Assembly: GCA_002269645.1 (NCBI GenBank)
Contig: NIVC01001009.1
Span: forward strand, 1 to 64,000
Direction: 5' to 3'
Length of the DNA: 64,000 bases
From: Macrostomum lignano
Taxonomy: Eukaryota
Shown here one piece after another: positions 1,634 through 61,300 of the stretch. Both the position numbers and the translations under genes were made by a program. The notes under the pieces were generated by a model that ran no database searches, was not told the DNA's origin, and saw only the letters and a program-made list of their open reading frames with translations. Every line of letters starts with the position of its first letter. Position 1 is the stretch's first letter.

Positions 1634-1990
1634 TCTAGTACTTCCTTTCCTGGCATCTAGCGCTCCCTTTTCAGGCATCTACATGTAGTACTCCCTGTCT
1701 AGGAATCTAGCACTCCCTTTCTAGGAATCTAGCACTCCCTTTCTAGGAATCTAGCACTCCCTTTCTAGGAATCTAGTAATTCCTTTCCTGGCATCTAGCG
1801 CGCTCTCTTTTCAGACATCTACATGTAGCACTCCCTTTCTAGGAATCTAGCACTCCCTTTCTAGGAATCTAGCACTCCCTTTCTAGGAATCTAGCACTCC
1901 CTTTCTTAAAAAAAATCTAGCACTCTAGGGATCTAGTAGTCCCTTTCCTTTCATCTAGCACTACCTTTCTAGGAATCTAGCACCCCCTTT
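1634..1990. repeat. Degenerate 22-bp minisatellite (CTAGCACTCCCTTTCTAGGAAT)
   Basis: Directly visible tandem copies between two convergent gene ends. Confidence 0.9.
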
Positions 1991-2188
1991 TCAGGGTTCT
2001 GCAAATATGTTCTGTTTTTCCAATACCCACTTATTAGTACAAGCACGTCGTACAGCGTTCAATATTTGAAAAAATCACCTGTTCCGGTAATTTGATCGCA
2101 AAGGCAAAAATATTAATAATATTCCTAATTAGACAATCAAGACTTAAAATCAAAGTTTTAAGACTTTATTCCAATAAGTCTTTGTCCA

Positions 2189-2908: not shown

Positions 2909-3652
2909 CTTGTCCTCGATATGTAACAAAAGTATCAGCTTTGGAATCTCGCACCGCGCGAGACGTGACTTCTTCTTTGATCGGGTGTTTGTAAGCGTCA
3001 CGAGAAAAGCGAACGGAATGCTGTGTCTTTTAAGACTTTGGCGAGCCTTTTCCCTATCTGGCTTGGTGCATTCGTGAGAAGGGCTTCTATTCCAAGAGAG
3101 ATAAGAAATAATCTTGGGCTAAGCCTAGCTCACGGTCTGCAATCTGCAGCGGGGTAAGGTATTGTATATAGGTGCCCTTGAAACTCGTAAGCGAGCAAAT
3201 GAGCGAATATGATACATTGCCAAGTCTGTCTGTGCCTGAGTGATTTGGCTCTAGATCAACCCTCAGGGGGCTACTAAGTATAAGTCATATGCGCCAGAGT
3301 TACGATGCAATGGGCCTTGCAGATAAAAGTCCAAGACACTGTCCGAATGGCAACTTTACTTACCTACATGTAGAAACCCTGTTGGAAGATAGGCTGAGTG
3401 CTGTCTTAGTTTTTGTTTTTTCCTGCTATCTTTCTAAGCAGGAGATTCCTTATAGAAAAATATATATATTAAAATTTTTAATCAAACTGAAACTTTTGTA
3501 GTTTTCAAAATTTTCAACTGCAGTCAAAATCAGAAAATTTTTGACCACCTTTCGAAGGCTTCATTTTAAAGTGCCCGAAATCACCTCTTAGAAATCGCAT
3601 ATACATCTATATGAATCTACATGAAGGTTTTTGCCGACAGTCTTGCTTAGAA

Positions 3653-6600
3653 GATGCAGTCATCAAGTCTAATTGGCCTGACACTCAAAGCTGCAGTCTA
3701 ATAGATGCAGTCATCAAGTCTAATTGGCCTGACACTCAAAGCTGCAGTCTAATAGATGCAATCATCAAGTCTAATTGGCCTGACACTCAAAGCTGCAGTC
3801 TAATAGATGCAGTCATCAAGTCTAATTGGCCTGACACTCAAAGCTGCAGTCTAATAGATGCAGTCATCAAGTCTAATTGGCCTGACACTCAAAGCTGCAG
3901 TCTAATAGATGCAATCATCAAGTCTAATTGGCCTGACACTCAAAGCTGCAGTCTAATAGATGCAGTCATCAAGTCTAATTGGCCTGACACTCAAAGCTGC
4001 AGTCTAATAGATGCAGTCATCAAGTCTAATTGGCCTGACACTCAAAGCTGCAGTCTAATAGATGCAATCATCAAGTCTAATTGGCCTGACACTCAAAGCT
4101 GCAGTCTAATAGATGCAATCATCAAGTCTAATTGGCCGACACTCAAAGCTGCAGTCTAATAGATGCAATCATCAAGTCTAATTGGCCTGACACTCAAATC
4201 TGCAGTCTAAAGATGCAATCATCAAGTCTAACTGGCCTGACACTCAAAGCTGCAGTCTAATAGATGCAATCATCAAGTCTAATTGGCCTGACACTCAAAG
4301 CTGCAGTCTAATAGATGCAATCATCAAGTCTAACAGGCCTGACACTCAAAGCTGCAGTCTAATAGATGCAAGCATCAAGTCTAATTGGCCTGACACTCAA
4401 AGCTGCAGTCTAAAAGATGCAATCATCAAGTCTAACTGGCCTGACACTCAAAGCTGCAGTCTAATAGATGCAATCATCAAGTCTAATTGGCCTGACACTC
4501 AAAGCTGCAGTCTAATAGATGCAATCATCAAGTCTAACAGGCCTGACACTCAAAGCTGCAGTCTAATAGATGCAAGCATCAAGTCTAACTGGCCTGACAC
4601 TCAAAGCTGCAGTCTAAAGATGCAGTCATCAAGTCTAACTGGCTGACACTCAAAGCTGCAGTCTAATAGATGCAATCATCAAGTCTAACAGGCCTGACAC
4701 TCAAAGCTGCAGTCTAATAGATGCAATCATCAAGTCTAACTGGCCTGACACTCAAAGCTGCAGTCTAATAGATGCAATCATCAAGTCTAATTGGCCTGAC
4801 ACTCAAAGCTGCAGTCTAATAGATGCAATTATCAAGTCTAACAGGCCTGACACTCAAAGCTGCAGTCTAAAGATGCAATCATCAAGTCAACTAGTCTGAA
4901 CTCAAATCTGCAGTCTAATAGATGCAATCATCAAGTCTAATAGGCCTGACACTCAAAGCTGCAGTCTAATAGATGCAATCATCAAGTCTAACAGGCCTGA
5001 CACTCAAAGCTGCAGTCTAATAGATGCAGTCATCAAGTCTAACTGGCCTGACACTCAAAGCTGCAGTCTAATAGATGCAATCATCAAGTCTAACAGGCCT
5101 GACACTCAAAGCTGCAGTCTAATAGATGCAATCATCAAGTCTAATTGGCCTGACACTCAAAGCTGCAGTCTAATAGATGCAATCATCAAGTCTAACGGCT
5201 GACACTCAAAGCTGCAGTCTAATAGATGCAATTATCAAGTCTAACAGGCCTGACACTCAAAGCTGCAGTCTAATAGATGCAATCATCAAGTCTAACTAGT
5301 CTGAACTCAAATCTGCAGTCTAATAGATGCAATCATCAAGTCTAATTGGCCTGACACTCAAAGCTGCAGTCTAATAGATGCAATCATCAAGTCTAATTGG
5401 CCTGACACTCAAAGCTGCAGTCTAATAGATGCAATCATCAAGTCTAATTGGCCTGACACTCAAATCTGCAGTCTAAAAGATGCAATCATCAAGTCTAACT
5501 GGCCTGACACTCAAAGCTGCAGTCTAATAGATGCAATCATCAAGTCTAATTGGCCTGACACTCAAAGCTGCAGTCTAATAGATGCAATCATCAAGTCTAA
5601 TGGCCTGACACTCAAAGCTGCAGTCTAATAGATGCAAGCATCAAGTCTAATTGGCCTGACACTCAAAGCTGCAGTCTAAAGATGCAATCATCAAGTCTAA
5701 CTGGCCTGACACTCAAAGCTGCAGTCTAATAGATGCAATCATCAAGTCTAATTGGCCTGACACTCAAAGCTGCAGTCTAATAGATGCAATTATCAAGTCT
5801 AACAGGCCTGACACTCAAAGCTGCAGTCTAATAGATGCAATCATCAAGTCTAACTGGCCTGACACTCAAAGCTGCAGTCTAAAGATGCAGTCATCAAGTC
5901 TAACTGGCTGACACTCAAAGCTGCAGTCTAATAGATGCAATCATCAAGTCTAACAGGCCTGACACTCAAAGCTGCAGTCTAATAGATGCAATCATCAAGT
6001 CTAACTGGCCTGACACTCAAAGCTGCAGTCTAATAGATGCAATCATCAAGTCTAACTGGCCTGACACTCAAAGCTGCAGTCTAATAGATGCAATCATCAA
6101 GTCTAACAGGCCTGACACTCAAAGCTGCAGTCTAATAGATGCAATCATCAAGTCTAACAGGCCTGACACTCAAAGCTGCAGTCTAATAGATGCAATCATC
6201 AAGTCTAACTAGCCTGACACTCAAATCTGCAGTCTAATAGATGCAATCATCAAGTCTAACTGGCCGACACTCAAAGCTGCAGTCTAATAGATGCAGTCAT
6301 CAAGTCTAACTGGCCTGACACTCAAAGCTGCAGTCTAATAGATGCAGTCATCAAGTCTAATTGGCCTGACACTCAAAGCTGCAGTCTAATAGATGCAATC
6401 ATCAAGTCTAATTGGCCTGACACTCAAAGCTGCAGTCTAATAGATGCAGTCATCAAGTCTAATTGGCCTGACACTCAAAGCTGCAGTCTAATAGATGCAA
6501 TCATCAAGTCTAATTGGCCTGACACTCAAAGCTGCAGTCTAATAGATGCAGTCATCAAGTCTAATTGGCCTGACACTCAAAGCTGCAGTCTAATAGATGC

Positions 6601-9524
6601 AGTCATCAAGTCTAATTGGCCTGACACTCAAAGCTGCAGTCTAATAGATGCAATCATCAAGTCTAATTGGCCTGACACTCAAAGCTGCAGTCTAATAGAT
6701 GCAGTCATCAAGTCTAATTGGCCTGACACTCAAAGCTGCAGTCTAATAGATGCAATCATCAAGTCTAATTGGCCTGACACTCAAAGCTGCAGTCTAATAG
6801 ATGCAATCATCAAGTCTAATTGGCCTGACACTCAAAGCTGCAGTCTAATAGATGCAATCATCAAGTCTAATTGGCCTGACACTCAAAGCTGCAGTCTAAT
6901 AGATGCAATCATCAAGTCTAATTGGCCTGACACTCAAATCTGCAGTCTAAAAGATGCAATCATCAAGTCTAACTGGCCTGACACTCAAAGCTGCAGTCTA
7001 ATAGATGCAATCATCAAGTCTAATATGCCTGACACTCAAAGCTGCAGTCTAATAGATGCAATCATCAAGTCTAACAGGCCTGACACTCAAAGCTGCAGTC
7101 TAATAGATGCAAGCATCAAGTCTAATGGCCTGACACTCAAAGCTGCAGTCTAAAGATGCAATCATCAAGTCTAACTGGCCTGACACTCAAAGCTGCAGTC
7201 TAATAGATGCAATCATCAAGTCTAATTGGCCTGACACTCAAAGCTGCAGTCTAATAGATGCAATCATCAAGTCTAACAGGCCTGACACTCAAAGCTGCAG
7301 TCTAATAGATGCAATCATCAAGTCTAACTGGCCTGACACTCAAAGCTGCAGTCTAATAGATGCAATCATCAAGTCTAACTGGCTGACACTCAAAGCTGCA
7401 GTCTAATAGATGCAATCATCAAGTCTAACAGGCCTGACACTCAAAGCTGCAGTCTAATAGATGCAATCATCAAGTCTAACTGGCCTGACACTCAAAGCTG
7501 CAGTCTAATAGATGCAATCATCAAGTCTAACTGGCCTGACACTCAAAGCTGCAGTCTAATAGATGCAATCATCAAGTCTAACAGGCCTGACACTCAAAGC
7601 TGCAGTCTAATAGATGCAATCATCAAGTCTAACTCCTGACACTCAAATCTGCAGTCTAATAGATGCAATCATCAAGTCTAATAGGCCTGACACTCAAAGC
7701 TGCAGTCTAATAGATGCAATCATCAAGTCTAACAGGCCTGACACTCAAATCTGCAGTCTAATAGATGCAGTCATCAAGTCTAACTGGCCTGACACTCAAA
7801 GCTGCAGTCTAATAGATGCAAGCATCAAGTCTAACAGGCCTGACACTCAAAGCTGCAGTCTAATAGATGCAATCATCAAGTCTAATTGGCCTGACACTCA
7901 AAGCTGCAGTCTAATAGATGCAATCATCAAGTCTAACTAGCCTGACACTCAAATGCAGTCTAATAGATGCAATCATCAAGTCTAACTGGCCTGACACTCA
8001 AAGCTGCAGTCTAATAGATGCAGTCATCAAGTCTAACTGGCCGACACTCAAAGCTGCAGTCTAATAGATGCAGTCATCAAGTCTAATTGGCCTGACACTC
8101 AAAGCTGCAGTCTAATAGATGCAGTCATCAAGTCTAATTGGCCTGACACTCAAAGCTGCAGTCTAATAGATGCAATCATCAAGTCTAATTGGCCTGACAC
8201 TCAAAGCTGCAGTCTAATAGATGCAGTCATCAAGTCTAATTGGCCTGACACTCAAAGCTGCAGTCTAATAGATGCAGTCATCAAGTCTAATTGGCCTGAC
8301 ACTCAAAGCTGCAGTCTAATAGATGCAATCATCAAGTCTAATTGGCCTGACACTCAAAGCTGCAGTCTAATAGATGCAGTCATCAAGTCTAATTGGCCTG
8401 ACACTCAAAGCTGCAGTCTAATAGATGCAGTCATCAAGTCTAATTGGCCTGACACTCAAAGCTGCAGTCTAATAGATGCAATCATCAAGTCTAATTGGCC
8501 TGACACTCAAAGCTGCAGTCTAATAGATGCAAGCATCAAGTCTAACTGGCCTGACACTCAAAGCTGCAGTCTAAAAGATGCAGTCATCAAGTCTAACTGG
8601 CTGGACACTCAAAGCTGCAGTCTAATAGATGCAATCATCAAGTCTAACAGGCCTGACACTCAAAGCTGCAGTCTAATAGATGCAATCATCAAGTCTAACT
8701 GGCCAGACACTCAAAGCTGCAGTCTAATAGATGCAATCATCAAGTCTAACTGGCCTGACACTCAAAGCTGCAGTCTAATAGATGCAATCATCAAGTCTAA
8801 CAGGCCTGACACTCAAAGCTGCAGTCTAATAGATGCAATCATCAAGTCTAACTAGTCTGAACTCAAAGCTGCAGTCTAATAGATGCAATCATCAAGTCTA
8901 ACTGGCCGGACACTCAAAGCTGCAGTCTAAAAGATGCAATCATCAAGTCTAATTGGCCTGACACTCAAAGCTGCAGTCTAATAGATGCAATCATCAAGTC
9001 TAACTGGCCAGACACTCAAAGCTGCAGTCTAATAGATGCAATCATCAAGTCTAACTGGCCTGACACTCAAAGCTGCAGTCTAATAGATGCAATCATCAAG
9101 TCTAACAGGCCTGACACTCAAAGCTGCAGTCTAATAGATGCAATCATCAAGTCCAACTAGTCTGAAACTCAAATCTGCAGTCTAATAGATGCAATCATCA
9201 AGTCTAACTGGCCGGACACTCAAAGCTGCAGTCTAAAAGATGCAATCATCAAGTCTAACTGGCCAGACACTCAAAGCTGCAGTCTAATAGATGCAAGCAT
9301 CAAGTCTAACAGGCCTGACACTCAAAGCTGCAGTCTAATAGATGCAATCATCAAGTCCAACTAGTCTGAAACTCAAATCTGCAGTCTAATAGATGCAATC
9401 ATCAAGTCTAATTGGCCGGACACTCAAAGCTGCAGTCTAAAAGATGCAGTCATCAAGTCTAACTGGCCGGACACTCAAAGCTGCAGTCTAATAGATGCAG
9501 TCATCAAGTCTAACTGGCCGGACA
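3653..9524. repeat. 51-bp satellite, about 115 copies (GATGCAATCATCAAGTCTAATTGGCCTGACACTCAAAGCTGCAGTCTAATA)
   Basis: Head-to-tail units with no spacers; explains the 17-aa periodic ORFs at 3611 and 7614. Confidence 0.97.
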
Positions 9525-9888
9525 CACAACAGTTTTTTCTAGCTGATCTCACACGACAAGAAGACACTACACTGCACTGTATGGCCACAATTGCGATAGC
9601 AAAGCAGGGATTGGCTGCAGAAAAGCTTGGCCAATCCCAATTACAGAGCTGCACTCAGCAGCATTCCAGCGTCCTAAATCTACTCTTAGGCTTTCCCTCT
9701 GCATGCTCCCTACAAGCAGAAAGCAAAGCACTGTTTGTCAGGACGGTGTCAAACGAAAAAAGTTAATAAGCTATCAATCCATAATCAAGTCAAAGGGACA
9801 AAAGTGAGCAGTTGCCTCCAGCAGAAAGGGTACGTCAATCCATACCTATTATTGGACAGAGCTGTTTTAGCAATCCAGCATCCACAAA

Positions 9889-37267: not shown

Positions 37268-37831
37268 TCTTTTCCAAAGTCTTTTCTAAACAATATTCGC
37301 TTTTCCTATTTAAGTCATTCAAATTCTAACTTTTGCGCTTCAGGAGAATTTGACTATGCAAAAAAGCCTAGTCTTACACAAAATCAATATCCTGCTTACA
37401 CAACAAAAAATCGCATAGGGCATGCACATTTTGGAACTATGTAGATCAGAAAATTAAAGTCGAATCGTGGGGGGTGTTTTTTAGCAGTTTGGGGATGAAT
37501 ACTACAACTACAACAACAGCATCAACTGGGGCTTTGCACGTGGTGATATGGTGGCGCAGCTCCTGGGAGCCGTCGATTGGCGGCCCCTGTGAGATGCTCA
37601 GCGCAAACAACAACAACAGCATCAACATATGGTCTACTCCAATGCCGAGACACGTTGAAAAGGACATGGCTTGTAAATCAAAAGAAATTCGCAAGCAGAG
37701 AAGCAAGTCCACGGGAAAAACTGCACGTAGTGAATAAATAATTATGCCTAGTTTTTAGTATTCCGAATGCGTTCTGAAAATTTCTATTTACGAATAAAAA
37801 TTGAGTTTGCAAATTAGTCAGTCAGTGGGTA

Positions 37832-40800
37832 CACACATGTCCTGAAGCCTTCTCAAGGTGAAAATAATGTCAGCCTCAAATGACAGTGATTTATGCATTC
37901 ACTTGAACCTTAGCAAGGTATACGTGCAATTTTAAAAAAATCTACCGAGCTATCTCCATTCTACAAGTACTTCATTCCATAGCTTGTGATAATGCATAAT
38001 TTGCATTGATTGTACATATGGGTAGAACCGTAGATCAAAGTACATGTAGGTTAAACCAGTGATAGCCGATTTCAATTATAGTAAACCAACTTAGATGATG
38101 CAACAAATATAAAGTTTCATGTAGCTCAGCGGGGGTTTGGGTTGTGTGGCTTTGCCAATGTACTCAAATTTGGTCCCTCTGGCCCATGAGCTTGAGTGTG
38201 CTCTGTCCAGTGTACTTGACTCTAGACTGTTATAGGCATGTTGGTTGTATGCTTCCTACTTGTATAATAAAATCAATTGATGATAAATTCTGCAAGGCAC
38301 GATTTCTTTTCACAAACCAAGCTCAACCTGTATTTGTTAGTGACTTGACTTGCAGTCCATAGTGAGCTTCAAGCCTACTTTCAATATTTCTACTCACCTT
38401 GCCATACATGTATAAAGAAATGAGCCATGCAACGCATGCACTATCACACGAAGAAAATCGCCTCAAGATCTGCTTGTTGTGCTACAAAAAGGGCTCATCA
38501 ATGCAACGAATAGGTAATGCCTCACTGAAACGCATTCAGGCACACTTTTTGCCCAACTACAATGCGAATGATGAGCAGCTACCTGCAGCACTCTGTGCCC
38601 GATGCAACAAGCTTCTGGCTGACGTCGACAAGGGCATAAAAGCGCCGAGTGTTTTGCCGAACTCCTCCGAGGTCGTAAAGGTGAGCCCAACAAAGATTAC
38701 GCGACAGTCCAGCAGTTGTGCTTGCAAAATATGTGAGACTGCCCGGTTCAACCCGATTGGGAAAGGACTGGGAACATGGAAACCAGAGCCACATTCGCTT
38801 GGACGACCCGCGTGTTCGGATCCAGATCATGGTCTGCCACCGGCACAACCTGTTGTCATCTGCCAGCGCTGCCACTCAATGGTTGGCAGAGGTTTGCCTC
38901 ACTACTGCACGCAAACACAGTGACGAGAAAATCTATTCAGTAAGTTGTCGCTAGACCGTCGAGGTGCCGAAATCCACGCAAGTGACGTGATCAAAGCTAA
39001 GGCTGCTTCCACCGGCTCAAACTCTAGATTTCAATTGGCAACTAGAGGTCGTGATCTTACAGTGTGTGTTGGGCAACGGGCTGGTAGTTCTACATCAATG
39101 AGAGGTGGCTGCGCCGTACCAGCAGAGGAATTCAGCCGATTCCAGCAGACGCTGTGTTTGAGCGGTCGGCAAACTAAGTTGGCTGCCCAATTTTTTCGAG
39201 CATGGAAAGGACGCAAGAGCATTGAGCCCAATTTGCGCAGCAAACTGAGCGCCATCGACTCTGCTCTAGACGATTTGTTTGAGTTGACTAACCTAGAGAT
39301 GGACTGTGCCAAAGGAAAAAGGGAAATGCGCAGCATTGTATTCTGCACTGATCCTCTGGCTCTGATTGACAGAGTGATGGCACGTCGTCAGGTCAGTGCA
39401 GATGACGGCGCATTGATTAAAGTTGGCATCGACAGCGGAGGCGGCTTCTTGAAGTTTTGTGTTAGCATTGTGCCTGCTCAAGGTTTAAAAGATCAACCTA
39501 CCGGAAGTCGCAGCACGTACGCAGAAGGCGCATGCCGTTTCCATTTTGAGGATGGAGGAGTCCGTAAACTGCTCCTGCTTGCCATTGCCGAATCTGTTTC
39601 CGAGTCCTACGATAATCTGCAGCAGATCCTGAATCTTCTTAATTTGCAAGGATTTTCATTCTGTGCAGCAGTTGATATGAAAATTTCGAATGCGATCCTG
39701 GGACTTCAGTGCTGCAGCAGCACCCATCCCTGCCCTTGGTGCGAGACTGCCAGGATCGATTTTTCTAATCCAGACCGCACAAACGTGTTGAGATCGATCG
39801 GCGGTATTCGGCTACAGGCATTTGAGTACCAGCGCACTGTAGAAGAAAAAGCGCCGCGCAACGTGTCTGCTGCTGCTTTCAAAAACTGTGTGCGTCCTCC
39901 TCTGCTCGAAGTTCCAGACAGCACGATGGTGCTCCAGGCCATTCCACCAATGGGGCTGCATCTCTTGCTTGGCGTGACCAATCGACTATTCGAAGAACTG
40001 GACACTCAACTGCGAGGACTCGAAGACTGTCAGATAAGCACCGATGACTGGCTACAGCAGCTTGGCCTTCGACGACCATTGCAGAACGGTGGGAACTTTG
40101 CCGGAAACGCCTGCGAGTGTCTTCTAAATGGCGTCGACATTTTGATTGCAATGCTGGCTCAGCACAATGTGTTTTCGGCAATGCCTGTAGCTCACGCCCT
40201 ACGCTGCTTCCGCGATGTGAAGGCCTCGTGCTTTGGTATGAGTGTGTGTGGAGACTTTGAGAATCGAGTCCGGGCATTCGAACAAGCCTATATCGATCTT
40301 GGAATCCGCGTCACCCCGAAAGTCCACGCTGTTATTGACCACGTTGTCCAGTTTTTGAACATGTCCAATATAGCTGGAGAACCCAAGAAGGGACTTGGCT
40401 TCTGGTCTGAGCAGGTGGTTGAGACTGCACACCACGATTTCAGCAGCATGTGGCAAGACTTTCGGATCGATTTTCATCATCCATCGTATCCAGATCGACT
40501 GCACAAGTGTGTTGTTGCATACTGCTCTCGTCATGCCTAAACAAAATGTGAACTAGCTAAATCAATCAAGACTGCGAATTAGGATTATACATTTCTCTTT
40601 ATTGGGATGAACAAATAGTTCTTAGTCAGACCCTGTAGACTGGAAAGCGAAATTAAACAGAACATAATAAACAGGAAGTAAATAATTGGAATCTTTCAAA
40701 AAGCGTGTTATCTTACCCATTCAACCCACCGAAATACAATGTCCGCATTTCAAAATTCCATTCCAGCTTTGCAATGCATGCATAGAGATTGTTAGTTCAC

Positions 40801-41660
40801 TAGAAAATGAAATCTAAAAAAGACTAGATGATCGCTAGCTATTGTCTTATCCCGATAGGACCCTAAAGTTATTTTTTCTTTTATTTATTTTTTAATTAAT
40901 GATAGGAATACATTAGGTAGCTGGTGGAAACCTTAATTTAATTCTTTCTACGAGCGTTTGGTAAACTTATATCGCAGAAGTCCTTGTTCTTACCCATCAT
41001 CATGGAAAGGGAATAGCTTCCTTTGAAAACTCAGCAGAATTTAATAGAAGGATATGCCTATGGTTTCAAGGGCCAAAATGGCATGAATACGAGAGCTGTG
41101 CAGCAAATTTACAGGCTCACAGCCAATGAGATGGTAGCTACGTATGAGGAGGGAATAATAGCTACAACTCAAAAGCAAGCGATAGAAAAATATCTGGGAT
41201 AATATGCCCTTCATGCCTTGCATCACTCACGCACAATTTTGCGCAATGCTTCTTTGTCCACTTTTATGTAGCATTCTCTGTACTGTACTGTACGAGTGTT
41301 TATGCTGTTTTTTGTTACATTTAGTCACAATTATTCATTGATGTTTCAATTTATACTTTATACTTTGGACTTTGTAAGGTGATGGCATACCTATGAATTA
41401 TAATGAAAAGTTTCTGACTTGTTTTAAGATCATTTTTTCAAATTTCACAAACTCATGTAGACACTCATTTTTTGCATCACGCATATTGAAAACCAATAGT
41501 AATTAGGTCATTTGGTAATAAAGTGCTGTAAATCAGAGATAGCTCTGGAGATTTTTTTGAAATTGCACATATGTTGTGCTAAGGTCCAGATGAGTGTGTA
41601 AATTATTGTCATTTCAGGCTGACTTTATTTTCACCTTTAAAGGGCTTTAAGACATGTGTG
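37832..41660 (+). mobile_element. Full-length RAG1-like (Transib/Chapaev-related) cut-and-paste DNA transposon, 3,829 bp
   Basis: Gapless 125-bp TIRs (37832-37956 and 41536-41660), both starting CACACATGTC, with about 23 mismatches by hand count. Identical 5-bp flanks GGGTA (37827-37831 and 41661-41665). Internal DDE transposase. Confidence 0.92.
38420..40540 (+). pseudogene. RAG1-like DDE transposase (about 706 codons) interrupted by one in-frame TGA at 38921-38923
   Basis: Track ORFs 38399-38923 and 38945-40540 are in the same frame and read ...HYCTQTQ*RENLFSKLSLDRR.... N-terminal H-x7-C-x2-C...P-x3-C-x2-C...CKICETAR. Core GIDSGG (D at 39431), AVDMK..GL....THPCPWCE (D at 39674), GLHLLLG, FAGNAC..LL, HAVIDH, GLGFWSEQVVE (E at 40421). 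Confidence 0.85.
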
Positions 41661-42294
41661 GGGTAGAGATAAAAACGGGCTGTTTTTAATAACAACTTCT
41701 AAATTCACTAAATTCCAAACAAATTAAACTTTAAGACAAATATTAAGTAATTCATATTGAAACACAATTTTAATATTCTGCCTGTTAAAACTTAAATTCA
41801 CTTTTTATTTAGAATAATTGGGGCAAAACCAAGCGTTAATGTACTTACAAAGTCTAAATATAACATTTAACTTGCAGGAACGGAATGTATTGTTGTGCAT
41901 TCTGCAATTGAAAAGAAATTAAAAACTGATTTTTAAGCATAATGGACGGATTTTTCATACCTCAGTAATTGGAATAATGCAGAATTCCAAACCTACACAC
42001 ACGTGATATATTACTGTGATGTTGATAAATAAGCATCTATCAATCATAAACAGCCAAAAAAGTCAGGGCTGCTGTGCGAGCACGTGCAACTAATAACGTA
42101 TTTGTACTTGTATTATAACAAATAGCATTCACAGAGGGCTGTGAGGACCCCGAGCGACATCAAAACCAGCGCTGAGGCAGCTCTGTCCATTCCGCTGACT
42201 CCTGAGCACATATGCTCGTACAAACCAAGGACTGCTCAAGTAGATGGAAGGGAAACCTCGTTTCCTAGAAAATTTTAGAAGGCAGGTTTTCCCA

Positions 42295-43014: not shown

Positions 43015-43596
43015 TTACGCCCGTCCACTGCTGGCAATCTCGGTCATCTGACTGCACCGTTCAGCGTACAACTCTGCGTACTTCTTTGCCAGCTCAATGA
43101 ATGGAGCGTCGACTCCGTGCGCCTCCTTGGCGGAGGCCTCAAAATACAGCAGGCCATTGTTCTGGGCCATCTCCTGGCCTTGGCTGGCTGTAACAATTCG
43201 ACGATTGTCCAAATCTGATTTATTGGCCACCAGAGCGGTCGGCACGGCGCCTGAGCGGCCGAGCTTGGGCAGCTTGGCGAGCCACTGGGCGCACCTGCTG
43301 AACGAAGCCTCGCTAGTGACATCGTAGACCAGAATGCACAGGTCAGGCTTTTGCACATACTTTTCAACTACATCGCTGTAGGCGTCTTTACCGGCGCAGT
43401 CGTACAGGTACATTTCTACCTGGTCGCCTTGAGTCTGCGGCAGCATGCAGGATTTCACCACCAGCTCAACTCCCGTGGTCATGGAATAATTCTTTGGAAA
43501 ATGCTGGCCATCGCTGTGGAACATTTGCACCAGGGAGCTCTTGCCGGCAGTTGAGTCTCCGACTACGATCACTTTGGCTCGAAGGATCAGGGGCAT
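43015..43596 (-). CDS. IFT27: Intraflagellar transport protein 27 (RABL4), single exon, 193 aa
   Basis: LRAKVIVVGDSTAGKSSLVQMFHSDGQHFPKNYSMTTGVELVVK, DCAGK, NKSDL and EASAKE match IFT27 ([23 protein letters not shown], DSAGK). Confidence 0.95.
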   Translation of the reverse strand: MPLILRAKVIVVGDSTAGKSSLVQMFHSDGQHFPKNYSMTTGVELVVKSCMLPQTQGDQVEMYLYDCAGKDAYSDVVEKYVQKPDLCILVYDVTSEASFSRCAQWLAKLPKLGRSGAVPTALVANKSDLDNRRIVTASQGQEMAQNNGLLYFEASAKEAHGVDAPFIELAKKYAELYAERCSQMTEIASSGRA

Positions 43597-48604: not shown

Positions 48605-51600
48605 TCACGGTGTGAATCCGGCCCTGGCCGCCATGGAAGTCATTGAAGCTTCGAGAGACTGACAGAGCTCTGAGAATCTTTCCACGGTTGGAACTTCAGA
48701 CATCGCTGGATCCATTAAAACTTTGAGCAGCGTCTCGGAAGAGAAAATCTCCTTCACCATAGGAATAAGCGACTGCATTTTCATGAGAGTGCGACAGTGC
48801 TCCATAACAGAGTGAAGCGAGTTCCCATCGAAGCTGTACCGCTGCAGCATAAGTTCTAGATTTACTAATTCGTCCATTGTTGTGTCTTCAATTTGTTTGT
48901 CGTGACCTTCAAAGCTGAACGTGTACAGATGAGCCGGAAACTTCACCAGCGGTATGAGATCGTAGATGACGCGCTTATCAGCTGGGTCTACAACGCATCT
49001 GAATCGGCGAAATTCCCGCGTCTGCTTTTGGAAGACACCAAATAGAGTTTTGTCGCGCGATTCCAATAGCCGCCAAGAGTGAGTCAGCGAGAGTACCTGC
49101 ATTCAAGATAAGGGAAGCTATTGAGTGAGTCAGCGAGAGTACCTGCATTCAAGATAAGGGAAGCTATTGAGTGAGTCAGTGAGAGTACCTGCATTCAAGA
49201 TAAGGGAAGCTATTGAGTGAGTCAGCGAGAGTACCTGCATTCAAGATAAGGGAAGCTATTGAGTGAGTCAGTGAGAGTACCTGCATTCAAGATAAGGGAA
49301 GCTATTGAGTGAGTCAGTGAGAGTACCTGCATTCAAGATAAGGGAAGCTATTGAGTGAGTCAGCGAGAGTACCTGCATTCAAGATAAGGGAAGCTATTGA
49401 GTGATTCAGTGAGAGTACCTGCATTCAAGATCAGGGAAGCTATTGAGTGAGTCAGCGAGAGTACCTGCATTCAAGATCAGGGAAGCTATTGAGTGAGTCA
49501 GTGAGAGTACCTGCATTCAAGATAAGGGAAGCTATTGAGTGAGTCAGTGAGAGTACCTGCATTCAAGATAAGGGAAGCTATTGAGTGAGTCAGTGAGAGT
49601 ACCTGCATTCAAGATAAGGGAAGCTATTGAGTGAGTCAGTGAGATTACCTGTATTAAAGATCAGGGAAGCTATTGAGTGAGTCAGCGAGAGTACCTGCAT
49701 TCAAGATAAGGGAAGCTATTGAGTGAGTCAGTGAGAGTACCTGCATTCAAGATAAGGGAAGCTATTGAGTGAGTCAGTGAGAGTACCTGTATTAAAGATC
49801 AGGGAAGCTATTGAGTGAGTCAGTGAGAGTACCTGTATTAAAGATCAGGGAAGCTATTGAGTGAGTCAGTGAGAGTACCTGTATTAAAGATCAGGGAAGC
49901 TATTGAGTGAGTCAGTGAGAGTACCTGTATTAAAGATCAGGGAAGCTATTGAGTGAGTCAGCGAGAGTACCTGTATTAAAGATCAGGGAAGCTATTGAGT
50001 GAGTCAGCGAGAGTACCTGTATTAAAGATCAGGGAAGCTATTGAGTGAGTCAGTGAGAGTACCTGTATTAAAGATCAGGGAAGCTATTGAGTGAGTCAGT
50101 GAGAGTACCTGTATTAAAGATCAGGGAAGCTATTGAGTGAGTCAGTGAGAGTACCTGTATTAAAGATCAGGGAAGCTATTGAGTGAGTCAGTGAGAGTAC
50201 TTGTATTAAAGATCAGGGAAGCTATTGAGTGAGTCAGTGAGAGTACCTGTATTAAAGATCAGGGAAGCTATTGAGTGAGTCAGTGAGAGTACTTGTATTA
50301 AAGATCAGGGAAGCTATTGAGTGAGTCAGCGAGAATACCTGTATTAAAGATCAGGGAAGCTATTGAGTGAGTCAGTGAGAGTACCTGTATTAAAGATCAG
50401 GGAAGCTATTGAGTGAGTCAGTGAGAGTACCTGTATTAAAGATCAGGGAAGCTATTGAGTGAGTCAGTGAGAGTACCTGTATTAAAGATCAGGGAAGCTA
50501 TTGAGTGAGTCAGTGAGAGTACCTGTATTAAAGATCAGGGAAGCTATTGAGTGAGTCAGTGAGAGTACCTGTATTAAAGATCAGGAGCTGCCCCCCTATA
50601 GTGGGGGGGGGGGGTAATGTTTCCTGAAAAGACTGTCAACGCGGCTAAATTGACTCTTTGCCCCAGCCATCCTAGTAACAATCGTTCCACAGTCCCTGGG
50701 TTTGATTCCGCGCACGAACATTAATTTGGTCAATGGGGCTTGTTGCGCGGCTTAATCCACGAAGTCCAACCTCCCAAGGCGCAGAGTATGTACATGTCTA
50801 ACGGTGAGAAAGTCATGGCCGCTGTATATCCTGTCATGTCAAAATGAGAGAAAATTACCTGACTAGACGTCAAAGCCATCAGGACTGATCGATAAGCGAA
50901 CAGGTCTTTGAATTCGTTGCGCAACAGGAACAGTACTTCGATCCAGACTGAGAGCAGTTTAACTCGCTCTCGAGTGGTGCGCCGGGACAGTACAGTGAGG
51001 GACACGAGGCAGCGCAGCAGGTTGTGCCTGGAGAATTTGGCCAGGCTTGGTTTGATAAAACTCATCGATAAAATATACCTCACTCCGCATCAAGACACCC
51101 ACCTCACTCCGCATTCAGACACCCGACTCACTCCGCATTCAGACACCCACCTCACTCCGCATTCAGACACCCACCTCACTCCGCATTCAGACACCCACCT
51201 CACTCCGCATTCAGACACCCACCTCACTCCGCATTCAGACACCCACCTCACTCCGCATTCAGACACCCGACTCACTCCGCATTCAGACACCCACCTCACT
51301 CCGCATTCAGACACCCAACTCACTAAGCATTCAGACACCCACCTCACTCCGCATTCAGACACCCACCTCACTCCGCATTCAGACACCCACCTCACTCCGA
51401 ATTCAGACACCCACCTCACTCCGCATTCAGACACCCACCTCACTCCGCATTCAGACACCCGACTCACTCCGCATTCAGACACCCACCTCACTCCGCATTC
51501 AGACACCCACCTCACTCCGCATTCAGACACCCGACTCACTCCGCATTCAGACACCCGACTCACTCCGCATTCAGACACCCACCTCACTCCGCATTCAGAC

Positions 51601-56929: not shown

Positions 56930-58368
56930 ATAAGCTTTCTAGCAAGATAAACACACGTCTAACCTAGACAAACACATGACTGTCAGATGAATAAACAGTG
57001 TCATCTAGATAAACACACACCTGCTAGCAAGATAAGCACACGTGTAACCTAGACAAACACATGACTGCCAGATGAATAAACAGTGTCATCTAGATAAACA
57101 CACATGCCAGCAAGATAAACACACGTCTAACCTAGACAAACACATGACTGCCAGATGAATAAACAGTGTCATCTAGATAAACACACATGCCAGCAAGATA
57201 AACACACGTGTAACCTAGACAAACACATGACTGCCAGATGAATAAACAGTGTCATCTAGATAAACACACATGCCAGCAAGATAAACACACGTGTAACCTA
57301 GACAAACACATGACTGCCAGATGAATAAACAGTGTCATCTAGATAAACACACATGCCAGCAAGATAAAAACACGTCTAATCTAGACAAACACATGACTGC
57401 CAGATGAATAAACAGTGTCATCTAGATAAACACACATGCCAGCAAGATAAACACACGTCTAACCTAGACAAACACATGACTGCCAGATGAATAAACAGTG
57501 TCATCTAGATAAACACACATGCCAGCAAGATAAACACACGTCTAACCTAGACAAACACATGACTGCCAGATGAATAAACAGTGTCATCTAGATAAACACA
57601 CACCTGCTAGCAAGATAAGCACACGTGTAACCTAGACAAACACATGACTGCCAGATGAATAAACAGTGTCATCTAGATAAACACACATGCCAGCAAGATA
57701 AACACACGTGTAACCTAGACAAACACATGACTGCCAGATGAATAAACAGTGTCATCTAGATAAACACACATGCCAGCAAGATAAACACACGTGTAACCTA
57801 GACAAACACATGACTGCCAGATGAATAAACAGTGTCATCTAGATAAACACACATGCCAGCAAGATAAACACACGTCTAACCTAGACAAACACATGACTGC
57901 CAGATGAATAAACAGTGTCATCTAGATAAACACACATGCCAGCAAGATAAACACACGTGTAACCTAGACAAACACATGACTGCCAGATGAATAAACAGTG
58001 TCATCTAGATAAACACACATGCCAGCAAGATAAACACACGTCTAACATAGACAAACACATGACTGCCAGATGAATAAACAGTGTCATCTAGATAAACACA
58101 CATGCCAGCAAGATAAACACACGTCTAACCTAGACAAACACATGACTGCCAGATGAATAAACAGTGTCATCTAGATAAACACACATGCCAGCAAGATAAA
58201 CACACGTCTAACCTAGACAAACACATGACTGCCAGATGAATAAACAGTGTCATCTAGATAAACACACATGCCAGCAAGATAAACACACGTCTAACCTAGA
58301 CAAACACATGACTGCCAGATGAATAAACAGTGTCATCTAGATAAACACACATGCCAGCAAGATAAGCA
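56930..58368. repeat. 83-bp repeat, about 17 copies, built from four ~20-bp AGATAAACACAC-like subunits
   Basis: Period checked (57421 to 57504); ends about 10 nt from the KLHL stop codon. Confidence 0.95.
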
Positions 58369-58377
58369 CAAAAGCCG

Positions 58378-61300
58378 TCAAGCGGCAGCAAAAGCCACAG
58401 CAGCGGCGCCAGCCCTGCCGCTGGGCAGTGTGGCCCCGCTGGACCACCTGGCGGTGGCAGGATCGTACAGGTCCACGCAGTCGCAGTGAGTGGTGCCGTC
58501 GTAACCACCGCAGACGACAAGCAAGCTGCCCAGAGCACCAACGGCGGCCGCCTCTCTTGGAGAGCTTAGCGAAGCCAGCAAAGTCCATTGGTCGGTGAGT
58601 GGGTCGTAGCGTTCCACGCAAGCGAATCGTTTAGCGCTGGGATTCGAACTCGGGGCGTCGTGACCACCTACTGCGTAGATGTGGTCACCTAGCGCGGAGA
58701 CTCCGGCGCCACCGCGCCGTTTTAATAATGGCGCGCAGAGAGACCAGCGCTGGCTGTGAGGATTGAAGCTCTCAACCTGGATTGGGAACAGTTTTGAATA
58801 GTTTCAGGCCGATTGTCTAGGATATAGAGGCGATTTCTAGGATGTAAGTCGATTTCTAGGATGTTAAGGCGATTGTCTAGGATCTGTAAAGAGATTGTCT
58901 AAGATGTAGGGCGATTTTTAGGATGCAAAGGCGACTGTCTAGTATGTAGGGCGATTGTCTAGGATGTAGCGCGTTGGGCCATCCCACACAACATAAAAAC
59001 CTTACGCAACCCAAAGCCAATTCCAATTCCAATCAACATAAAAACCTTACGCCACCCAAAGCCAATTCCAAACTAAATAAAAACCTATGCTAACCTTAAA
59101 TTCATGCAAACCCATCACTAACTCAGCTCGGACTGCATATCCCGCACTGCACTATAAACAAAAGCATAAGAAGCCAGCAAGACACTTACAGTTTTCAAAC
59201 AAGAGGACCCATCCCTGCCGCCAACAGCGTACAGCCTGCCGTGCAGGGCGGCCACGCCAACAGTAGACCTAGGCAGCGACATTGGACTAACATAAGACCA
59301 AGACTTGGCCCCGGTGTCCCAGCGCTCGACAGTGTTCAAATAGGACCAACCATCGTGACCACCGATCGCGTAGACAACGCCAGCCAAGATGCCAACGCCC
59401 AGGCCGTGCCTGTGAGTGTTCATGCTCTGCAAGCTGGTCCAAGCAATCGGGCCGCCGCCACTGCCGCTCAGATTGGCGCAGATCACCGAACTAGTAGTCT
59501 TCAGGCCGTCCCGACCTCCCACTACTATTATTCTATTGTCAGGCAGACAGGCGACTCCGAACTGCAGCCGTGGACTATCCAGCTGGCCAGCCGGGCACCA
59601 TTTATTAATAAACGGATCGTAGGCAAGAATCTCCGTCAATGGCGTATCGGCTACGCCTCCTAGAAGCAGCAATTTACCGACTGTGGACAGTCTAGGCCTA
59701 GGACAGGCGTGCTGCAATTGCAGCTGAGGCCTGAGCTGATGCCTGTAAGCTTGCAAAACCTGGCGCAGGCACACGGCGCAGTCCCTAACTAACGGATGAG
59801 ATTCGACGCGATTAGCCAGGTAATCTGGCGGCAGCCGGCACAGGCGTACAGTCTGCAGAGCTCTGGGGAAATCTGCCCGACGTTGCGCAAGATCCGAGTC
59901 GCACCATTTCAAAATGGCCTCGAATACGACTGATTCGTTGGCTACTCTGAGCTCGTCTGAGTCCAACAATGCCACTAGTTCGTCAATTGACAGGCCTAAG
60001 AATTCCTGGTGCATTAGTACAGATGGGAAATTGGCTACAGCGAAGGCTGACGCAGCCTGTTGCAGTTTGGAACAGTTGCGCAGCGCAGCGAATTGCCCAA
60101 TGCCTAAACAGTTGGATGCGTGCAGCTGCTTGGCCAGGTACTGGGAGGCCGCGTCAATCACGGCACGGATCTGGAGCAGGCAGGCGGCTGATAGAAGCGA
60201 CTCAACATTGTCCTGGCCCAGCTGCAGGGTGCCTGGAGTGCGCCATGGTGGTATTTTTTTAATTCTTACACTCTGTCGTTTATCTCATATACTCCATCTA
60301 ATGGCTCTCCCTTTATCAGAGCCCTTACACTTAATCTCATCTATCCTATACCATCTCAGATTTCTCGATCTTTGTCTTATCGCACCCTCATGCTTTATCT
60401 CAGATCTCACTCATATATTTACGCTCGTAATCTTAACGGTGAATTTCCTAATTCATACTTAATCCCAATAGCCAGAGACTCGCACCAGTGTACAGGAAGC
60501 TGACGCACTGCCTCAGCGCTTCCGGTTCAACCTCGTGCAGCGCCACCTCAGAAGCGGCCGCTTCGCTCATTCTGCCCTGAAACATGGCCCGGAAGTAGTC
60601 CGAACCGGCGCTTAATACCAGCTTGTGCGCCGGGATGCGCAGGCAGGTGGATTGCACCGAACCCGAACCGGCTGCGTCACTGCCCGAGTCTGCGTAGGCT
60701 ATCAGGGTGACGTCAGTGAGAGCTTCGTCCGACCAGCAGGCGGCCATTTGTCTGCGGAGAGACCGGGCAAAGCATAGGTCAGGACAAGGAAAGCTCAGTG
60801 GGAGGTACGGATTCATCTCAATGAGTTAGTCGGTCGGGATCCCTAATCCGGTAGGTCAAAGTGGATCAGGTCAGTTCGAAGTTCGAATTGGATCAGGTCA
60901 TTTCAAAGTGGGTCAGGTCAGTTCAAACTTCAAAGTGGGTCAGGTCATTTCAAAGTGGGTCAGATCAGTTCAAACTTCAAAGTGGGTCAGGCCAGTTCAA
61001 AGTGAGGCAAGTCAGTTCAAAGTGAGGCAATCAGTTCAAAGTAGGTCAGATCAGTTTGAAGTGGGTCAGGTCATTGAAAGTGGGTCAGGTCATTTCAAAG
61101 TTCGAATTGGATCAGGTCATTTCAAAGTTCGAATTGGATCAGGTCATTTCAAAGTTCGAATTGGATCAGGTCAGTTCAAATTGGATCAGGTCATTTCAAA
61201 GTGGGTCAGGTCAGTTCAAACTTCAAAGTGGGTCAGGTCATTTCAGAGTGGGTCAGATCAGTTCAAACTTCAAAGTGGGTCAGGCCAGTTCAAAGTGAGG

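What the first reader, a model, noticed from the sequence alone, without database searches (positions are those of the whole stretch)
37827..41665. Complete RAG1-like transposon combining a RAG1 N-terminal-type zinc finger, a RAG1-core-like DDE domain, CAC termini and a 5-bp TSD
Seen: 125-bp CAC...GTG TIRs, perfect GGGTA duplication and one long frame. The N-terminus HEENRLKICLLC..LPAALCARC..SCACKICETAR has the same spacing as the recalled human RAG1 non-core region (HQANLRHLCRIC..HPTEFCHNC..SCDICNTAR). The core has counterparts of RAG1 D600 (GIDSG), D708 with C727/C730 (AVDMK..CPWC vs GYDEK..CTLC), H937/H942 (HAVIDH vs HKTLAH) and E962 (WSEQVVE vs WASEGNE). Established: Transib and RAG/ProtoRAG make 5-bp TSDs. 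Chapaev elements carry this N-terminal Zn finger but are described with 4-bp (Chapaev3, 3-bp) TSDs. Inference: this may be a RAG2-less intermediate with Chapaev-like domain content and Transib/RAG-like target duplication. A C-x2-C-x9-H-x-C motif sits where RAG1 has its RING.
Basis: partly seen in the sequence, partly recalled or inferred. Interest (0 to 1): 0.85.

Follow-up and report, generated by a model that had tools for sequence, protein, structure and literature searches.

The report
Chapaev-type DNA transposon, nonsense-mutated copy
This is one recently inserted copy, disabled by a single stop codon, of a Chapaev-group cut-and-paste DNA transposon of the flatworm Macrostomum lignano. 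Its RAG1-like transposase and RAG1-like N-terminal zinc finger are already described features of Chapaev elements, so it is a new family of a known kind with a slightly unusual 4-5 bp target duplication.

Summary
Window 37832-41660 is a 3829-bp element with imperfect ~134-nt CAC...GTG inverted repeats. It is flanked by GGGTA on both sides and carries one 710-codon frame broken only by a CGA>TGA change at codon 172.

Two paralogous loci in the same Macrostomum lignano assembly are empty sites with a single GGGTA. Four further independent insertions exist, and three insertion loci carry intact ORFs.

The protein is collinear end to end with Hydra Chapaev-5_HM (30% identity, E 2e-97). That includes the N-terminal 'Chapa' zinc finger and the C-x2-C-x9-H-x-C knuckle, which is not a RING. 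It has the Chapaev/CMC motifs C(2)C, LH and H(4)H, and it nests among Chapaev-like sequences.

The RAG1-like core is real: predicted fold E 1e-11, profile E ~1e-5. D423, C442/C445, H640/H645 and E672 align to mouse RAG1 D708, C727/C730, H937/H942 and E962. This resemblance is already published for Chapaevs.

The target duplication is 5 bp at three of five insertions, 4 bp at one, and ambiguous at one. So the element is not a clean Transib/RAG-type intermediate. Verdict: a new, probably still active Chapaev family of modest interest.

The parts
37827..37831 (.). Left copy of the target-site duplication, GGGTA
   Evidence: The paralogous empty sites L007 and L006 carry a single GGGTA.
37832..37965 (+). 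Left terminal inverted repeat, starting CACACATGTCCTGAAGCC
   Evidence: 134 nt, 80% complementary to the right arm. The terminus is identical in all five insertion loci. The motif CACAnnTGTCCTGAAG is shared with a marine-metagenome sister family.
37966..38407 (+). 5' non-coding part of the element; presumed to hold the promoter and 5' UTR (inferred)
   Evidence: No ORF was listed here that belongs to the frame. It is conserved at ~98% in the other copies.
38408..40540 (+). Transposase gene: single exon, 710 codons plus stop. This copy is interrupted at codon 172.
   Evidence: It is 99% identical to M. lignano PAA49210.1 (P0001), which is intact.
38447..38746 (+). Chapa domain (RAG1 NZD-like zinc finger), residues H14-R113. 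Candidate ligands: H14, C22, C25, C63, C66, C104/C106, C109.
   Evidence: The cysteines are invariant or nearly invariant in 79 homologues. phmmer with Chapaev fragments taken from PMC4411706 supplement 5 identifies homologues. The BLAST alignment to Chapaev-5_HM covers the domain. The AF2 model has pLDDT >90 here and its nearest solved folds are ZAD domains. hhalign to RAG1 95-230 registers the same His and three Cys pairs but is weak, E 0.016.
38801..38809 (+). Conserved G-R-P motif between the Chapa domain and the knuckle. AT-hook-like; a role in DNA binding is inferred.
   Evidence: 'GRP' appears in the consensus.
38861..38908 (+). C152-x2-C155-x9-H165-x-C167 zinc knuckle.
   Evidence: Nearly invariant in the family. 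Present as CTKCLSVIARGLPHNC in Chapaev-5_HM. It has only four ligands.
38921..38923 (+). Premature stop TGA (codon 172). CGA/Arg in intact copies.
   Evidence: The copy at locus L025 shares it.
38930..40537 (+). RAG1-core-like DDE transposase domain, residues ~175-710
   Evidence: Foldseek: the top 44 PDB hits are all RAG1 core chains (E 1e-11, ~580 aligned columns), then BbRAGL and HzTransib. HMM against PDB sequences: RAG1 4.8e-6, BbRAG1L 6.7e-5. hhalign against vertebrate RAG1: E 1.2e-5.
39431..39433 (+). D342 in GIDSGGG, the proposed first catalytic Asp (counterpart of RAG1 D600; inferred)
   Evidence: Conserved in at least 90% of sequences. It sits at the end of a beta-strand in the model. 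The residue-level match to D600 was not obtained by profile alignment.
39674..39676 (+). D423 in AVDMK, the second catalytic Asp. Aligns to mouse RAG1 D708.
   Evidence: Invariant. Aligned.
39731..39742 (+). C442-P-W-C445, the C(2)C zinc motif. Aligns to mouse RAG1 C727/C730.
   Evidence: This is a motif of the CMC/Chapaev signature (PMC4079192).
39959..39961 (+). H518 of the 'LH' motif (PPMGLHLLLG). Aligns to RAG1 ALHCDIG.
   Evidence: Invariant. Aligned.
40325..40342 (+). H640-AVID-H645, the H(4)H zinc motif. Aligns to mouse RAG1 H937/H942.
40421..40423 (+). E672, the last residue of SEQVVE and the catalytic Glu. Aligns to mouse RAG1 E962.
   Evidence: Invariant. Aligned.
40541..41526 (+). 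3' non-coding part of the element, with no second gene
   Evidence: The only ORF of at least 60 aa here is a 61-aa one on the minus strand.
41527..41660 (-). Right terminal inverted repeat, ending ...GACATGTGTG
41661..41665 (.). Right copy of the target-site duplication, GGGTA

Best explanation
The feature is one copy of a young, low-copy family of Chapaev-group DNA transposons. It belongs to the RING-less subgroup that includes Hydra Chapaev-1/2/5_HM and Aedes Chapaev-1_AA, within the CMC/'CMCT' clade that also holds Transib and RAG1. The host is the flatworm Macrostomum lignano.

The element encodes a single intron-less 710-aa transposase with three parts:
- a GRP motif followed by a C2HC knuckle;

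Inferred mechanism: transposase dimers bind the ~134-nt imperfect TIRs and cut at the conserved CAC...GTG termini. By analogy with RAG, Transib and hAT they probably leave hairpins on the flanking DNA. They then join the 3' ends to target DNA with a stagger of usually 5, sometimes 4, nucleotides, and gap repair produces the duplication.

This copy inserted after the local segment was duplicated, because two paralogous loci are empty. It cannot make full-length transposase because of the CGA>TGA change at codon 172. A second copy carries the same stop at another site with its own duplication, so the defective lineage was apparently mobilised in trans by the intact copies present elsewhere in the genome.
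For: Shown directly:
- TIRs, termini, TSD and frame.
- Organism and source contig: L008 is 100% identical to the window (names).
- Two empty sites, each with one GGGTA.
- Five independent insertion loci with identical termini. Three loci have intact ORFs; two copies share the TGA.
- 15 synonymous against 6 non-synonymous codon differences between copies, which indicates selection for a working transposase.

Family placement:
- P0065 matches the published Chapaev-5_HM N-terminus at E 1e-61. It aligns with this protein over 711 columns at 30% identity, E 2e-97.
- The Chapaev hallmarks of CAC/GTG termini and the C(2)C, LH and H(4)H motifs are all present (PMC4079192).
- 8555 representative clusters match the family profile.
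- The M. lignano clade nests among Chapaev-like sequences in an NJ tree.

RAG1-like core.

Chapa/NZD link: PMC4411706, preprint 10.64898/2026.01.24.700457, and the ZAD-like fold of the N-terminal model.
Against: - No Repbase or Dfam library was available, so the classification rests on one sequence identified through a published alignment fragment and on a distance tree without an outgroup.
- The TSD (5 bp in 3 of 5 insertions) departs from the 3-4 bp given for Chapaevs.
- Hairpin formation, the 4-5 nt stagger as an enzyme property, and current activity are inferred, not shown.
- Assembly indels could distort junctions: L001 and L003 differ by one C at the same junction.
- D342 as the counterpart of RAG1 D600 rests on conservation and the fold match, not on a residue-level profile alignment.
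Confidence: 0.88

Rival explanations
1. One reading: a RAG2-less evolutionary intermediate that is closer to Transib/RAG than ordinary Chapaevs are, combining Chapaev domain content with a Transib/RAG-type 5-bp target duplication.
For: - 5-bp TSDs at three of five insertions, with empty sites confirming the window's.
- RAG1 chains are the best fold matches, ahead of HzTransib.
- Profile matches to RAG1 and BbRAG1L.
- The terminus CACACAT resembles the RSS/Transib heptamer.
Against: - Full-length collinearity with Chapaev-5_HM at E 2e-97, against only ~13% structure-based identity to RAG1.
- No Pfam RAG1 family matched even at E <= 1.
- The M. lignano clade is a terminal branch inside Chapaev-like diversity.
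- At least one insertion has a 4-bp TSD.
- No solved Chapaev or CACTA structure turned up among the PDB matches. The fold ranking therefore cannot show greater closeness to RAG1 than other Chapaevs have.
- TSD length is already known to be labile in this clade (10.64898/2026.08.26.747230).
Confidence: 0.06
2. All insertions really have 5-bp duplications. The 4-bp cases (L023, L024, and the L003 variant) would then be single-base deletions or long-read assembly errors at the junctions, making the family a uniformly 5-bp Chapaev.
For: - L001/L002 and L003 are copies of one insertion yet differ by one C in a C-run at the junction.
- L024 becomes a perfect GGTCA duplication if one G of a GGG run was lost.
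Against: - L023 (cTTAA|...|TTAAg) would need a non-homopolymer deletion exactly at the junction.
- L023 and L024 belong to the same sub-lineage and both parse as 4 bp.
Confidence: 0.25
3. A domesticated host gene derived from a transposase, rather than a mobile element.
For: Excess of synonymous over non-synonymous differences between copies.
Against: - Intact TIRs and TSDs.
- Presence/absence polymorphism between paralogous loci.
- Five insertion sites with unrelated flanks.
- A nonsense allele that has itself been copied to a new site.
Confidence: 0.01

Closest known systems
Chapaev-5_HM, Chapaev-2_HM and Chapaev-1_HM (Hydra) and Chapaev-1_AA (Aedes): the RING-less Chapaev subgroup of Repbase (Kapitonov & Jurka 2007; alignment in PMC4411706 supplement 5)
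   Same: - Same end-to-end protein architecture: HEENR...CxxC / PxxxCxxC / CxCxIC Chapa domain, C2HC knuckle, then a DDE core with C(2)C, LH and H(4)H.
- 30% identity over 711 columns to the Chapaev-5_HM protein.
- CAC...GTG termini and a single gene.
   Different: - The host is a flatworm.
- The TSD is mostly 5 bp here. The one Hydra Chapaev-5_HM-like copy examined has 4 bp, ATAT, and the literature gives 3-4 bp.
- ~134-nt imperfect TIRs.
Transib transposons (e.g. HzTransib)
   Same: - 5-bp TSD at most insertions.
- CAC termini.
- DDE core of the same fold with C2/H2 zinc site (6pqy, E 2e-4).
- No RAG2-like partner.
   Different: - Transib transposases lack the Chapa/NZD domain.
- There was no sequence-level match to HzTransib in the profile search.
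- A 4-bp TSD also occurs here.
RAG1 / RAG1L of the ProtoRAG and RAG-like transposons
   Same: - Core fold over ~580 columns.
- Aligned D708, C727/C730, H937/H942 and E962.
- An N-terminal zinc finger of the NZD/Chapa type in the same position.
- 5-bp TSD.
   Different: - No RAG2-like gene.
- No RING or C2H2 dimerisation domain.
- No Pfam RAG1 family matched.
- Only ~13% identity in the structural alignment.
- The TIRs are long and similar on both sides. 12/23 asymmetry was not examined.
Chapaev3 (e.g. Garfield, Merrow)
   Same: CAC termini, a Chapa-related N-terminus and the CMC motifs.
   Different: Chapaev3 elements insert with a TWA 3-bp TSD between A and T. Their Chapa sequence type (CxNxxDxFCYICG...) is different and gave no match to this family's proteins.

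Membership tests
Chapaev (CMC / CMCT clade DNA transposons) | TIRs with invariable 5'-CAC ... GTG-3' termini | tested here: met
   CACACATG...CATGTGTG in all five insertion loci. The hallmark is as stated in PMC4079192.
Chapaev (CMC / CMCT clade DNA transposons) | [quoted passage not shown] | tested here: met
   D423; C442-PW-C445; L517-H518; H640-AVID-H645; E672. All are invariant or nearly so in 79 homologues.
Chapaev (CMC / CMCT clade DNA transposons) | N-terminal Chapa zinc-finger domain | tested here: met
   Chapaev-1/2/5_HM and Chapaev-1_AA fragments from PMC4411706 supplement 5 match family members at E 1e-9 to 1e-61. The BLAST alignment to Chapaev-5_HM covers the domain. The fold is ZAD-like, as reported for NZD/Chapa.
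Chapaev (CMC / CMCT clade DNA transposons) | Full-length transposase homology to a catalogued Chapaev family | tested here: met
   P0001 against P0065 (Chapaev-5_HM): 30% identity, 711 columns, E 2e-97. Nested in the NJ tree (no outgroup).
Chapaev (CMC / CMCT clade DNA transposons) | Target-site duplication of 3-4 bp | tested here: inconclusive
   Five insertions: GGGTA, TCTCC and TAATA are 5 bp; TTAA is 4 bp; GTCA is 4 bp, or GGTCA (5 bp) if a G-run indel is assumed. The range overlaps the family's but the mode is 5.
Transib | 5-bp TSD | tested here: inconclusive
   Met at 3 of 5 insertions and not met at 1-2.
Transib | Transposase groups with Transib proteins and has no Chapa/NZD domain | tested here: not met
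   A Chapa domain is present. HzTransib is only the 45th fold hit, at E 2e-4, and is absent from the profile search.
Transib | RSS-like TIR (CACAATG-type heptamer plus A-rich nonamer at a 12/23 spacing) | not tested
   The terminus CACACAT is heptamer-like. Nonamer and spacer asymmetry were not analysed statistically.
RAG1/RAG1L (RAG-like transposons, ProtoRAG) | Adjacent RAG2-like gene inside the element | tested here: not met
   There is only one substantial ORF between the TIRs.
RAG1/RAG1L (RAG-like transposons, ProtoRAG) | Sequence membership in the RAG1 families (Pfam PF12940 and related) | tested here: not met
   No RAG1 Pfam family matched at E <= 1. Real RAG1 proteins carry 9-11 such domains.
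RAG1/RAG1L (RAG-like transposons, ProtoRAG) | RAG1 core fold with the DDE triad and the C2H2 zinc site | tested here: met
   Foldseek E 1e-11, TM (target) 0.5-0.6 over ~580 columns. Residue alignment of D2, C/C, H/H and E. D1 was not aligned at residue level.
RAG1/RAG1L (RAG-like transposons, ProtoRAG) | RING finger after the N-terminal zinc finger | tested here: not met
   Only a four-ligand C-x2-C-x9-H-x-C knuckle is present. The same motif occurs in the RING-less Chapaev-5_HM.

The most novel reading that the evidence does not exclude
The transposase of this M. lignano Chapaev family genuinely integrates with either a 4- or a 5-nucleotide stagger, with 5 as the mode. It would then be a natural bridge between the 4-bp Chapaevs and the 5-bp Transib/RAG enzymes. 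The family has intact copies that look recently active, and its host is a laboratory flatworm. It could therefore serve as an experimental system for how RAG1-like transposases set target-cut spacing, and for what the Chapa/NZD zinc finger does in a transposase.
Probability: 0.35. Interest if true: 0.5.

Novelty: new member of a known kind. Interest (0 to 1): 0.3.

Why it matters
[quoted passage not shown] No Chapaev work in the papers read here included biochemical or structural experiments, and the 2026 NZD preprint notes that experimental validation of Chapa-domain function is lacking.

This family offers:
- intact 710-aa genes at three loci;
- exact ends;
- verified empty sites;
- evidence of very recent movement, including trans-mobilisation of a nonsense copy.

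That makes it a practical candidate for a first functional study. Its mostly 5-bp, sometimes 4-bp, duplication adds a data point to the emerging view that TSD length is a labile trait in the CMC/Transib/RAG clade. It does not change the picture of RAG origins.

Tried and rejected
- **Pfam on the two ORF halves:** no family matched, RAG1 families included. The only weak hints were zf-AD and DUF6487.
- **Single-sequence phmmer against PDB:** nothing relevant.
- **Word-indexed search with alignment A1:** fewer hits than with the single sequence.
- **TSD of the marine sister family (P0023):** termini are clear ((C)CACAGTTGTCCTGAAGG). Flanks cannot be paired, because contigs break at the repeat. 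L012's left flank is the reverse complement of L014's right flank, and the one contig with both flanks (L013) shows no duplication. This is probably chimeric assembly.
- **P0022 contigs:** the left end is cut inside the TIR.
- **Second M. lignano family (P0004, L004):** 216-nt 99% TIRs starting CAG, but no clean TSD of any length.
- **Patella element (L005):** degraded, with a large interruption near the left end. The TSD is ambiguous, 3 bp TAA or 4 bp AATA.
- **Chapaev-2_HM-like contig (L022):** the right end is cut by the contig end.
- **hhalign of the N-terminus against vertebrate RAG1 alone:**
- **RAG1 NZD NMR structure:** it did not appear among the PDB matches, so no direct superposition was possible.
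- **Yuan & Wessler 2011:** could not be read.
- **Rejected: GGGTA is a chance match.** Contradicted by the empty sites.
- **Rejected: the TGA lies in an intron or is recoded.** The paralogues have CGA in an otherwise identical single exon.

Full report
**1. What is in the sequence**

Window 37832-41660 (3829 bp) is bounded by imperfect inverted repeats. The arms are 37832-37965 and 41527-41660: 134 nt, 80% complementary. BLAST extends them to about 148 nt. They begin CACACATGTCC and end GGACATGTGTG.

GGGTA lies immediately outside both ends, at 37827-37831 and 41661-41665. A 23-nt terminal probe is unique in the window, with no matches expected by chance.

Between the repeats there is one long frame, 38408-40540, interrupted only by TGA at 38921-38923. 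No other ORF of note lies inside the element, so there is no RAG2-like second gene.

**2. Where it comes from, and proof that it is an insertion**

The protein is 99% identical to hypothetical protein BOX15_Mlig018049 of Macrostomum lignano (P0001 = PAA49210.1, 710 aa, intact).

I looked up the neighbouring single-exon Rab-like GTPase gene (window 43018-43596, minus strand). This returned three loci of assembly GCA_002269645.1:
- L008 is 100% identical to the window, which therefore comes from contig NIVC01001009.1.
- L007 (elsewhere on the same contig) and L006 (NIVC01000077.1) are paralogous segments, about 97% and 93% identical in the flanks.

In L007 and L006 the two flanks abut with a 5-bp overlap. 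Their sequence is ...cagtcagtGGGTAgagataaaaacggg..., with one GGGTA. The element therefore inserted after the segmental duplication.

**3. Other copies and the length of the duplication**

Members of the same 90% protein cluster led to four more insertion loci with unrelated flanks: L001/L002/L003 (three paralogous copies of one insertion), L023, L024 and L025. All align to element positions 1-3829 and stop there, and all have identical termini.

| Locus | Left / right flanking bases | Reading |
|---|---|---|
| window | GGGTA / GGGTA | 5 bp |
| L001, L002 | TCTCC / TCTCC | 5 bp; the paralogue L003 lacks one C of a C-run on the left |
| L025 | TAATA / TAATA | 5 bp |
| L023 | cTTAA / TTAAg | 4 bp (TTAA) |
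| L024 | gGTCA / GTCAg | 4 bp (GTCA), or 5 bp (GGTCA) if one G of a GGG run at the right junction was lost |

Strictly, the window's empty site is also compatible with a 4-bp duplication plus one extra G. Three loci would then each need an extra base that happens to extend the repeat, a chance of about 1/64. So 5 bp is real at those three sites.

The family thus makes mostly 5-bp and at least occasionally 4-bp duplications, unless the 4-bp cases are junction indels.

**4. State and history of the copies**

The copies fall into three sub-lineages, about 98.6% identical to one another: {window, L025} at 99.84%, {L001-L003}, and {L023, L024} at 99.76%.

The window copy and L025 both carry CGA>TGA at codon 172, while the other three loci are intact. 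Because L025 sits at a different site with its own duplication, the nonsense-bearing element was copied after it was broken. It was presumably mobilised in trans.

Between the window copy and L001 there are 15 synonymous and 6 non-synonymous codon differences. That is the pattern expected for a transposase kept functional while the lineages diverged.

**5. What family it is**

Single-sequence searches found no Pfam family and no PDB sequence relative. A profile of the homologues, however, matched 8555 representative clusters (1282 at E <= 1e-30). Most are 650-730 aa proteins in which the core starts near residue 150. This is a very large family with a constant architecture.

Kapitonov and Koonin (PMC4411706) describe the 'Chapa' zinc-finger domain shared by RAG1 and the Chapaev transposases, and their supplement 5 prints its alignment.
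- P0065 matches Chapaev-5_HM at E 1e-61.
- P0066 matches Chapaev-2_HM at E 2e-33.
- Several others match Chapaev-1_AA and Chapaev-1_HM.

P0065 aligns with the M. lignano protein over 711 columns (30% identity, E 2e-97). The alignment runs from HEENR/HNQCR...CxxC through the CxCxIC motif, the C-x2-C-x9-H-x-C knuckle and the whole core.

The published Chapaev hallmarks are CAC/GTG termini and the C(2)C, LH and H(4)H motifs (PMC4079192). All are present: CPWC, GLH and HAVIDH.

In a distance tree of 79 homologues the M. lignano sequences form a terminal clade. That clade is sister to a marine-metagenome clade and lies inside the diversity that contains the Hydra and Aedes-like Chapaevs (no outgroup, so indicative only).

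A Hydra-genome copy of the Chapaev-5_HM-like element has CACCG...CGGTG termini and a 4-bp ATAT duplication. This agrees with the literature value.

**6. How RAG1-like it is**

- *Fold of the whole protein.* An AlphaFold2 model of the 710-aa protein (pLDDT 75.8, core mostly >85) finds RAG1 core chains as its 44 best PDB matches: E about 1e-11, 570-600 aligned columns, target-normalised TM 0.5-0.6. BbRAGL follows at 1e-7 and HzTransib at 2e-4. The next hit, Hermes, is not significant.
- *Profile against PDB sequences.* A 79-sequence profile hits zebrafish RAG1 at E 4.8e-6 and BbRAG1L at 6.7e-5.
- *Profile against vertebrate RAG1.* hhalign against 16 vertebrate RAG1s gives E 1.2e-5 over the segment from the second Asp to the Glu.
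- *Residue pairs.* In these alignments D423 pairs with mouse D708, C442/C445 with C727/C730, H518 with the His of ALHCDIG, H640/H645 with H937/H942, and E672 with E962. D342 (GIDSGGG) as the D600 counterpart rests on conservation and the fold match only.
- *Fold of the N-terminal domain.* A separate model of residues 2-171 is confident (pLDDT 84). Its nearest solved folds are ZAD domains, led by Pita 7POK (probability up to 0.98, 2.6 A over about 62 columns, E 0.05-0.14). [quoted passage not shown]

The RAG1 resemblance is therefore real. It is the resemblance already documented for Chapaevs as a group. C(2)C and H(3-4)H are shared by EnSpm, Mirage, Chapaev, Transib and RAG1 alike (PMC12730594).

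**7. Mechanism (inferred)**

- The transposase probably binds the long imperfect TIRs.
- The first ~16 nt, CACAnnTGTCCTGAAG, are conserved even in the marine sister family, whose protein is only about 38% identical. This suggests that they are the recognition and cleavage site.
- It probably cuts at the CAC/GTG ends through the D342-D423-E672 site. By analogy with RAG, Transib and hAT enzymes, it probably leaves hairpinned flanks.
- It probably then integrates with a 5-nt, sometimes 4-nt, stagger.

None of this has been tested for any Chapaev, as far as the papers read here show.

**8. Comparison and novelty**

The architecture, the termini and the RAG1 relationships match the RING-less Chapaev subgroup. 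The C-x2-C-x9-H-x-C motif is a conserved four-ligand knuckle that is also present in Chapaev-5_HM. It is not a RING.

The only departure from the family description is the predominance of 5-bp duplications. Variation of TSD length within one lineage of this clade has just been reported for Transib relatives, with 5, 3 and 2 bp (10.64898/2026.08.26.747230). The clade as a whole is described as making 2-5 bp TSDs.

I therefore file the element as a new family of a known kind, probably still active, with a 4-5 bp TSD. It is not an intermediate on the way to RAG. No paper in the library links Chapaev elements with M. lignano beyond a passing mention. Repbase and Dfam could not be consulted.

Noticed in passing
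window 38921-38923 and L025:2236-6063: The same CGA>TGA nonsense mutation is present in a second copy that is 99.84% identical. That copy sits at an unrelated site with its own TAATA duplication. The defective element therefore seems to have been mobilised in trans by the intact copies.
   Followed up: yes
L011-L020 (marine metagenome contigs, Tara and others): A sister family, with protein P0023 about 38% identical, has termini (C)CACAGTTGTCCTGAAGG. These are nearly the same as the M. lignano terminus CACACATGTCCTGAAGCC, so the terminal ~16 nt are conserved across distant hosts. L012's left flank is the exact reverse complement of L014's and L016's right flank, probably because the assembler joined the flank to either TIR.
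   Followed up: partly
L004:4503-7870 (M. lignano NIVC01000691.1): A second Chapaev-like family in the same genome (P0004, 47-49% identical). It has 216-nt, 99% identical TIRs that start CAGCGCG rather than CAC, and no recognisable target duplication. It sits next to a (TGTC)n-like tract.
   Followed up: partly
window 1-64000: The window is unusually dense in minisatellites, giving 56 TRF rows at score >= 200. Examples are a 51-bp unit x 116 copies at 3652-9529, an 83-bp unit x 17 at 56941-58370, and a 46-bp unit x 33 at 49077-50585. Many long 'ORFs' in the ORF list are just these repeats.
   Followed up: no
window 43018-43596 (-); L006, L007, L008: A single-exon Ras/Rab-family small GTPase gene (Pfam Ras, E 1.6e-40) lies 1.35 kb from the element. 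Its product is encoded identically at three paralogous loci, two of them on the same contig about 230 kb apart. All three share the same neighbours (a RasGEF gene and a 218-aa gene), which indicates a recent segmental duplication.
   Followed up: partly
window 59121-60161 (-) and 2192-3001 (-): Two host-gene fragments: a BACK plus Kelch-repeat ORF (E ~1e-28) and a YhhN-family ORF (E 6e-23).
   Followed up: no
L001/L002 versus L003, left junction of the element: Paralogous copies of one insertion differ by a single C in a C-run exactly at the TSD/TIR junction (TCTCC|CAC versus TCTC|CAC). This is a warning that single-base indels, real or from the assembly, can change the apparent TSD length in this genome.
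   Followed up: yes
L022:306-1916: The metagenome contig that carries the Chapaev-2_HM-like element also carries a retrotransposon pol fragment (RVT_1, aspartic protease) just upstream of the element's left TIR.
   Followed up: no
L005:1553-7378 (Patella caerulea chromosome JAZGQO010000015.1): A degraded relative (P0010, split ORFs). Its left terminal ~45 nt appear about 3 kb away from the rest of the left TIR, suggesting a nested insertion or a rearrangement. Its termini read CAGCTCACACC...GGTGTGAGCTG.
   Followed up: partly
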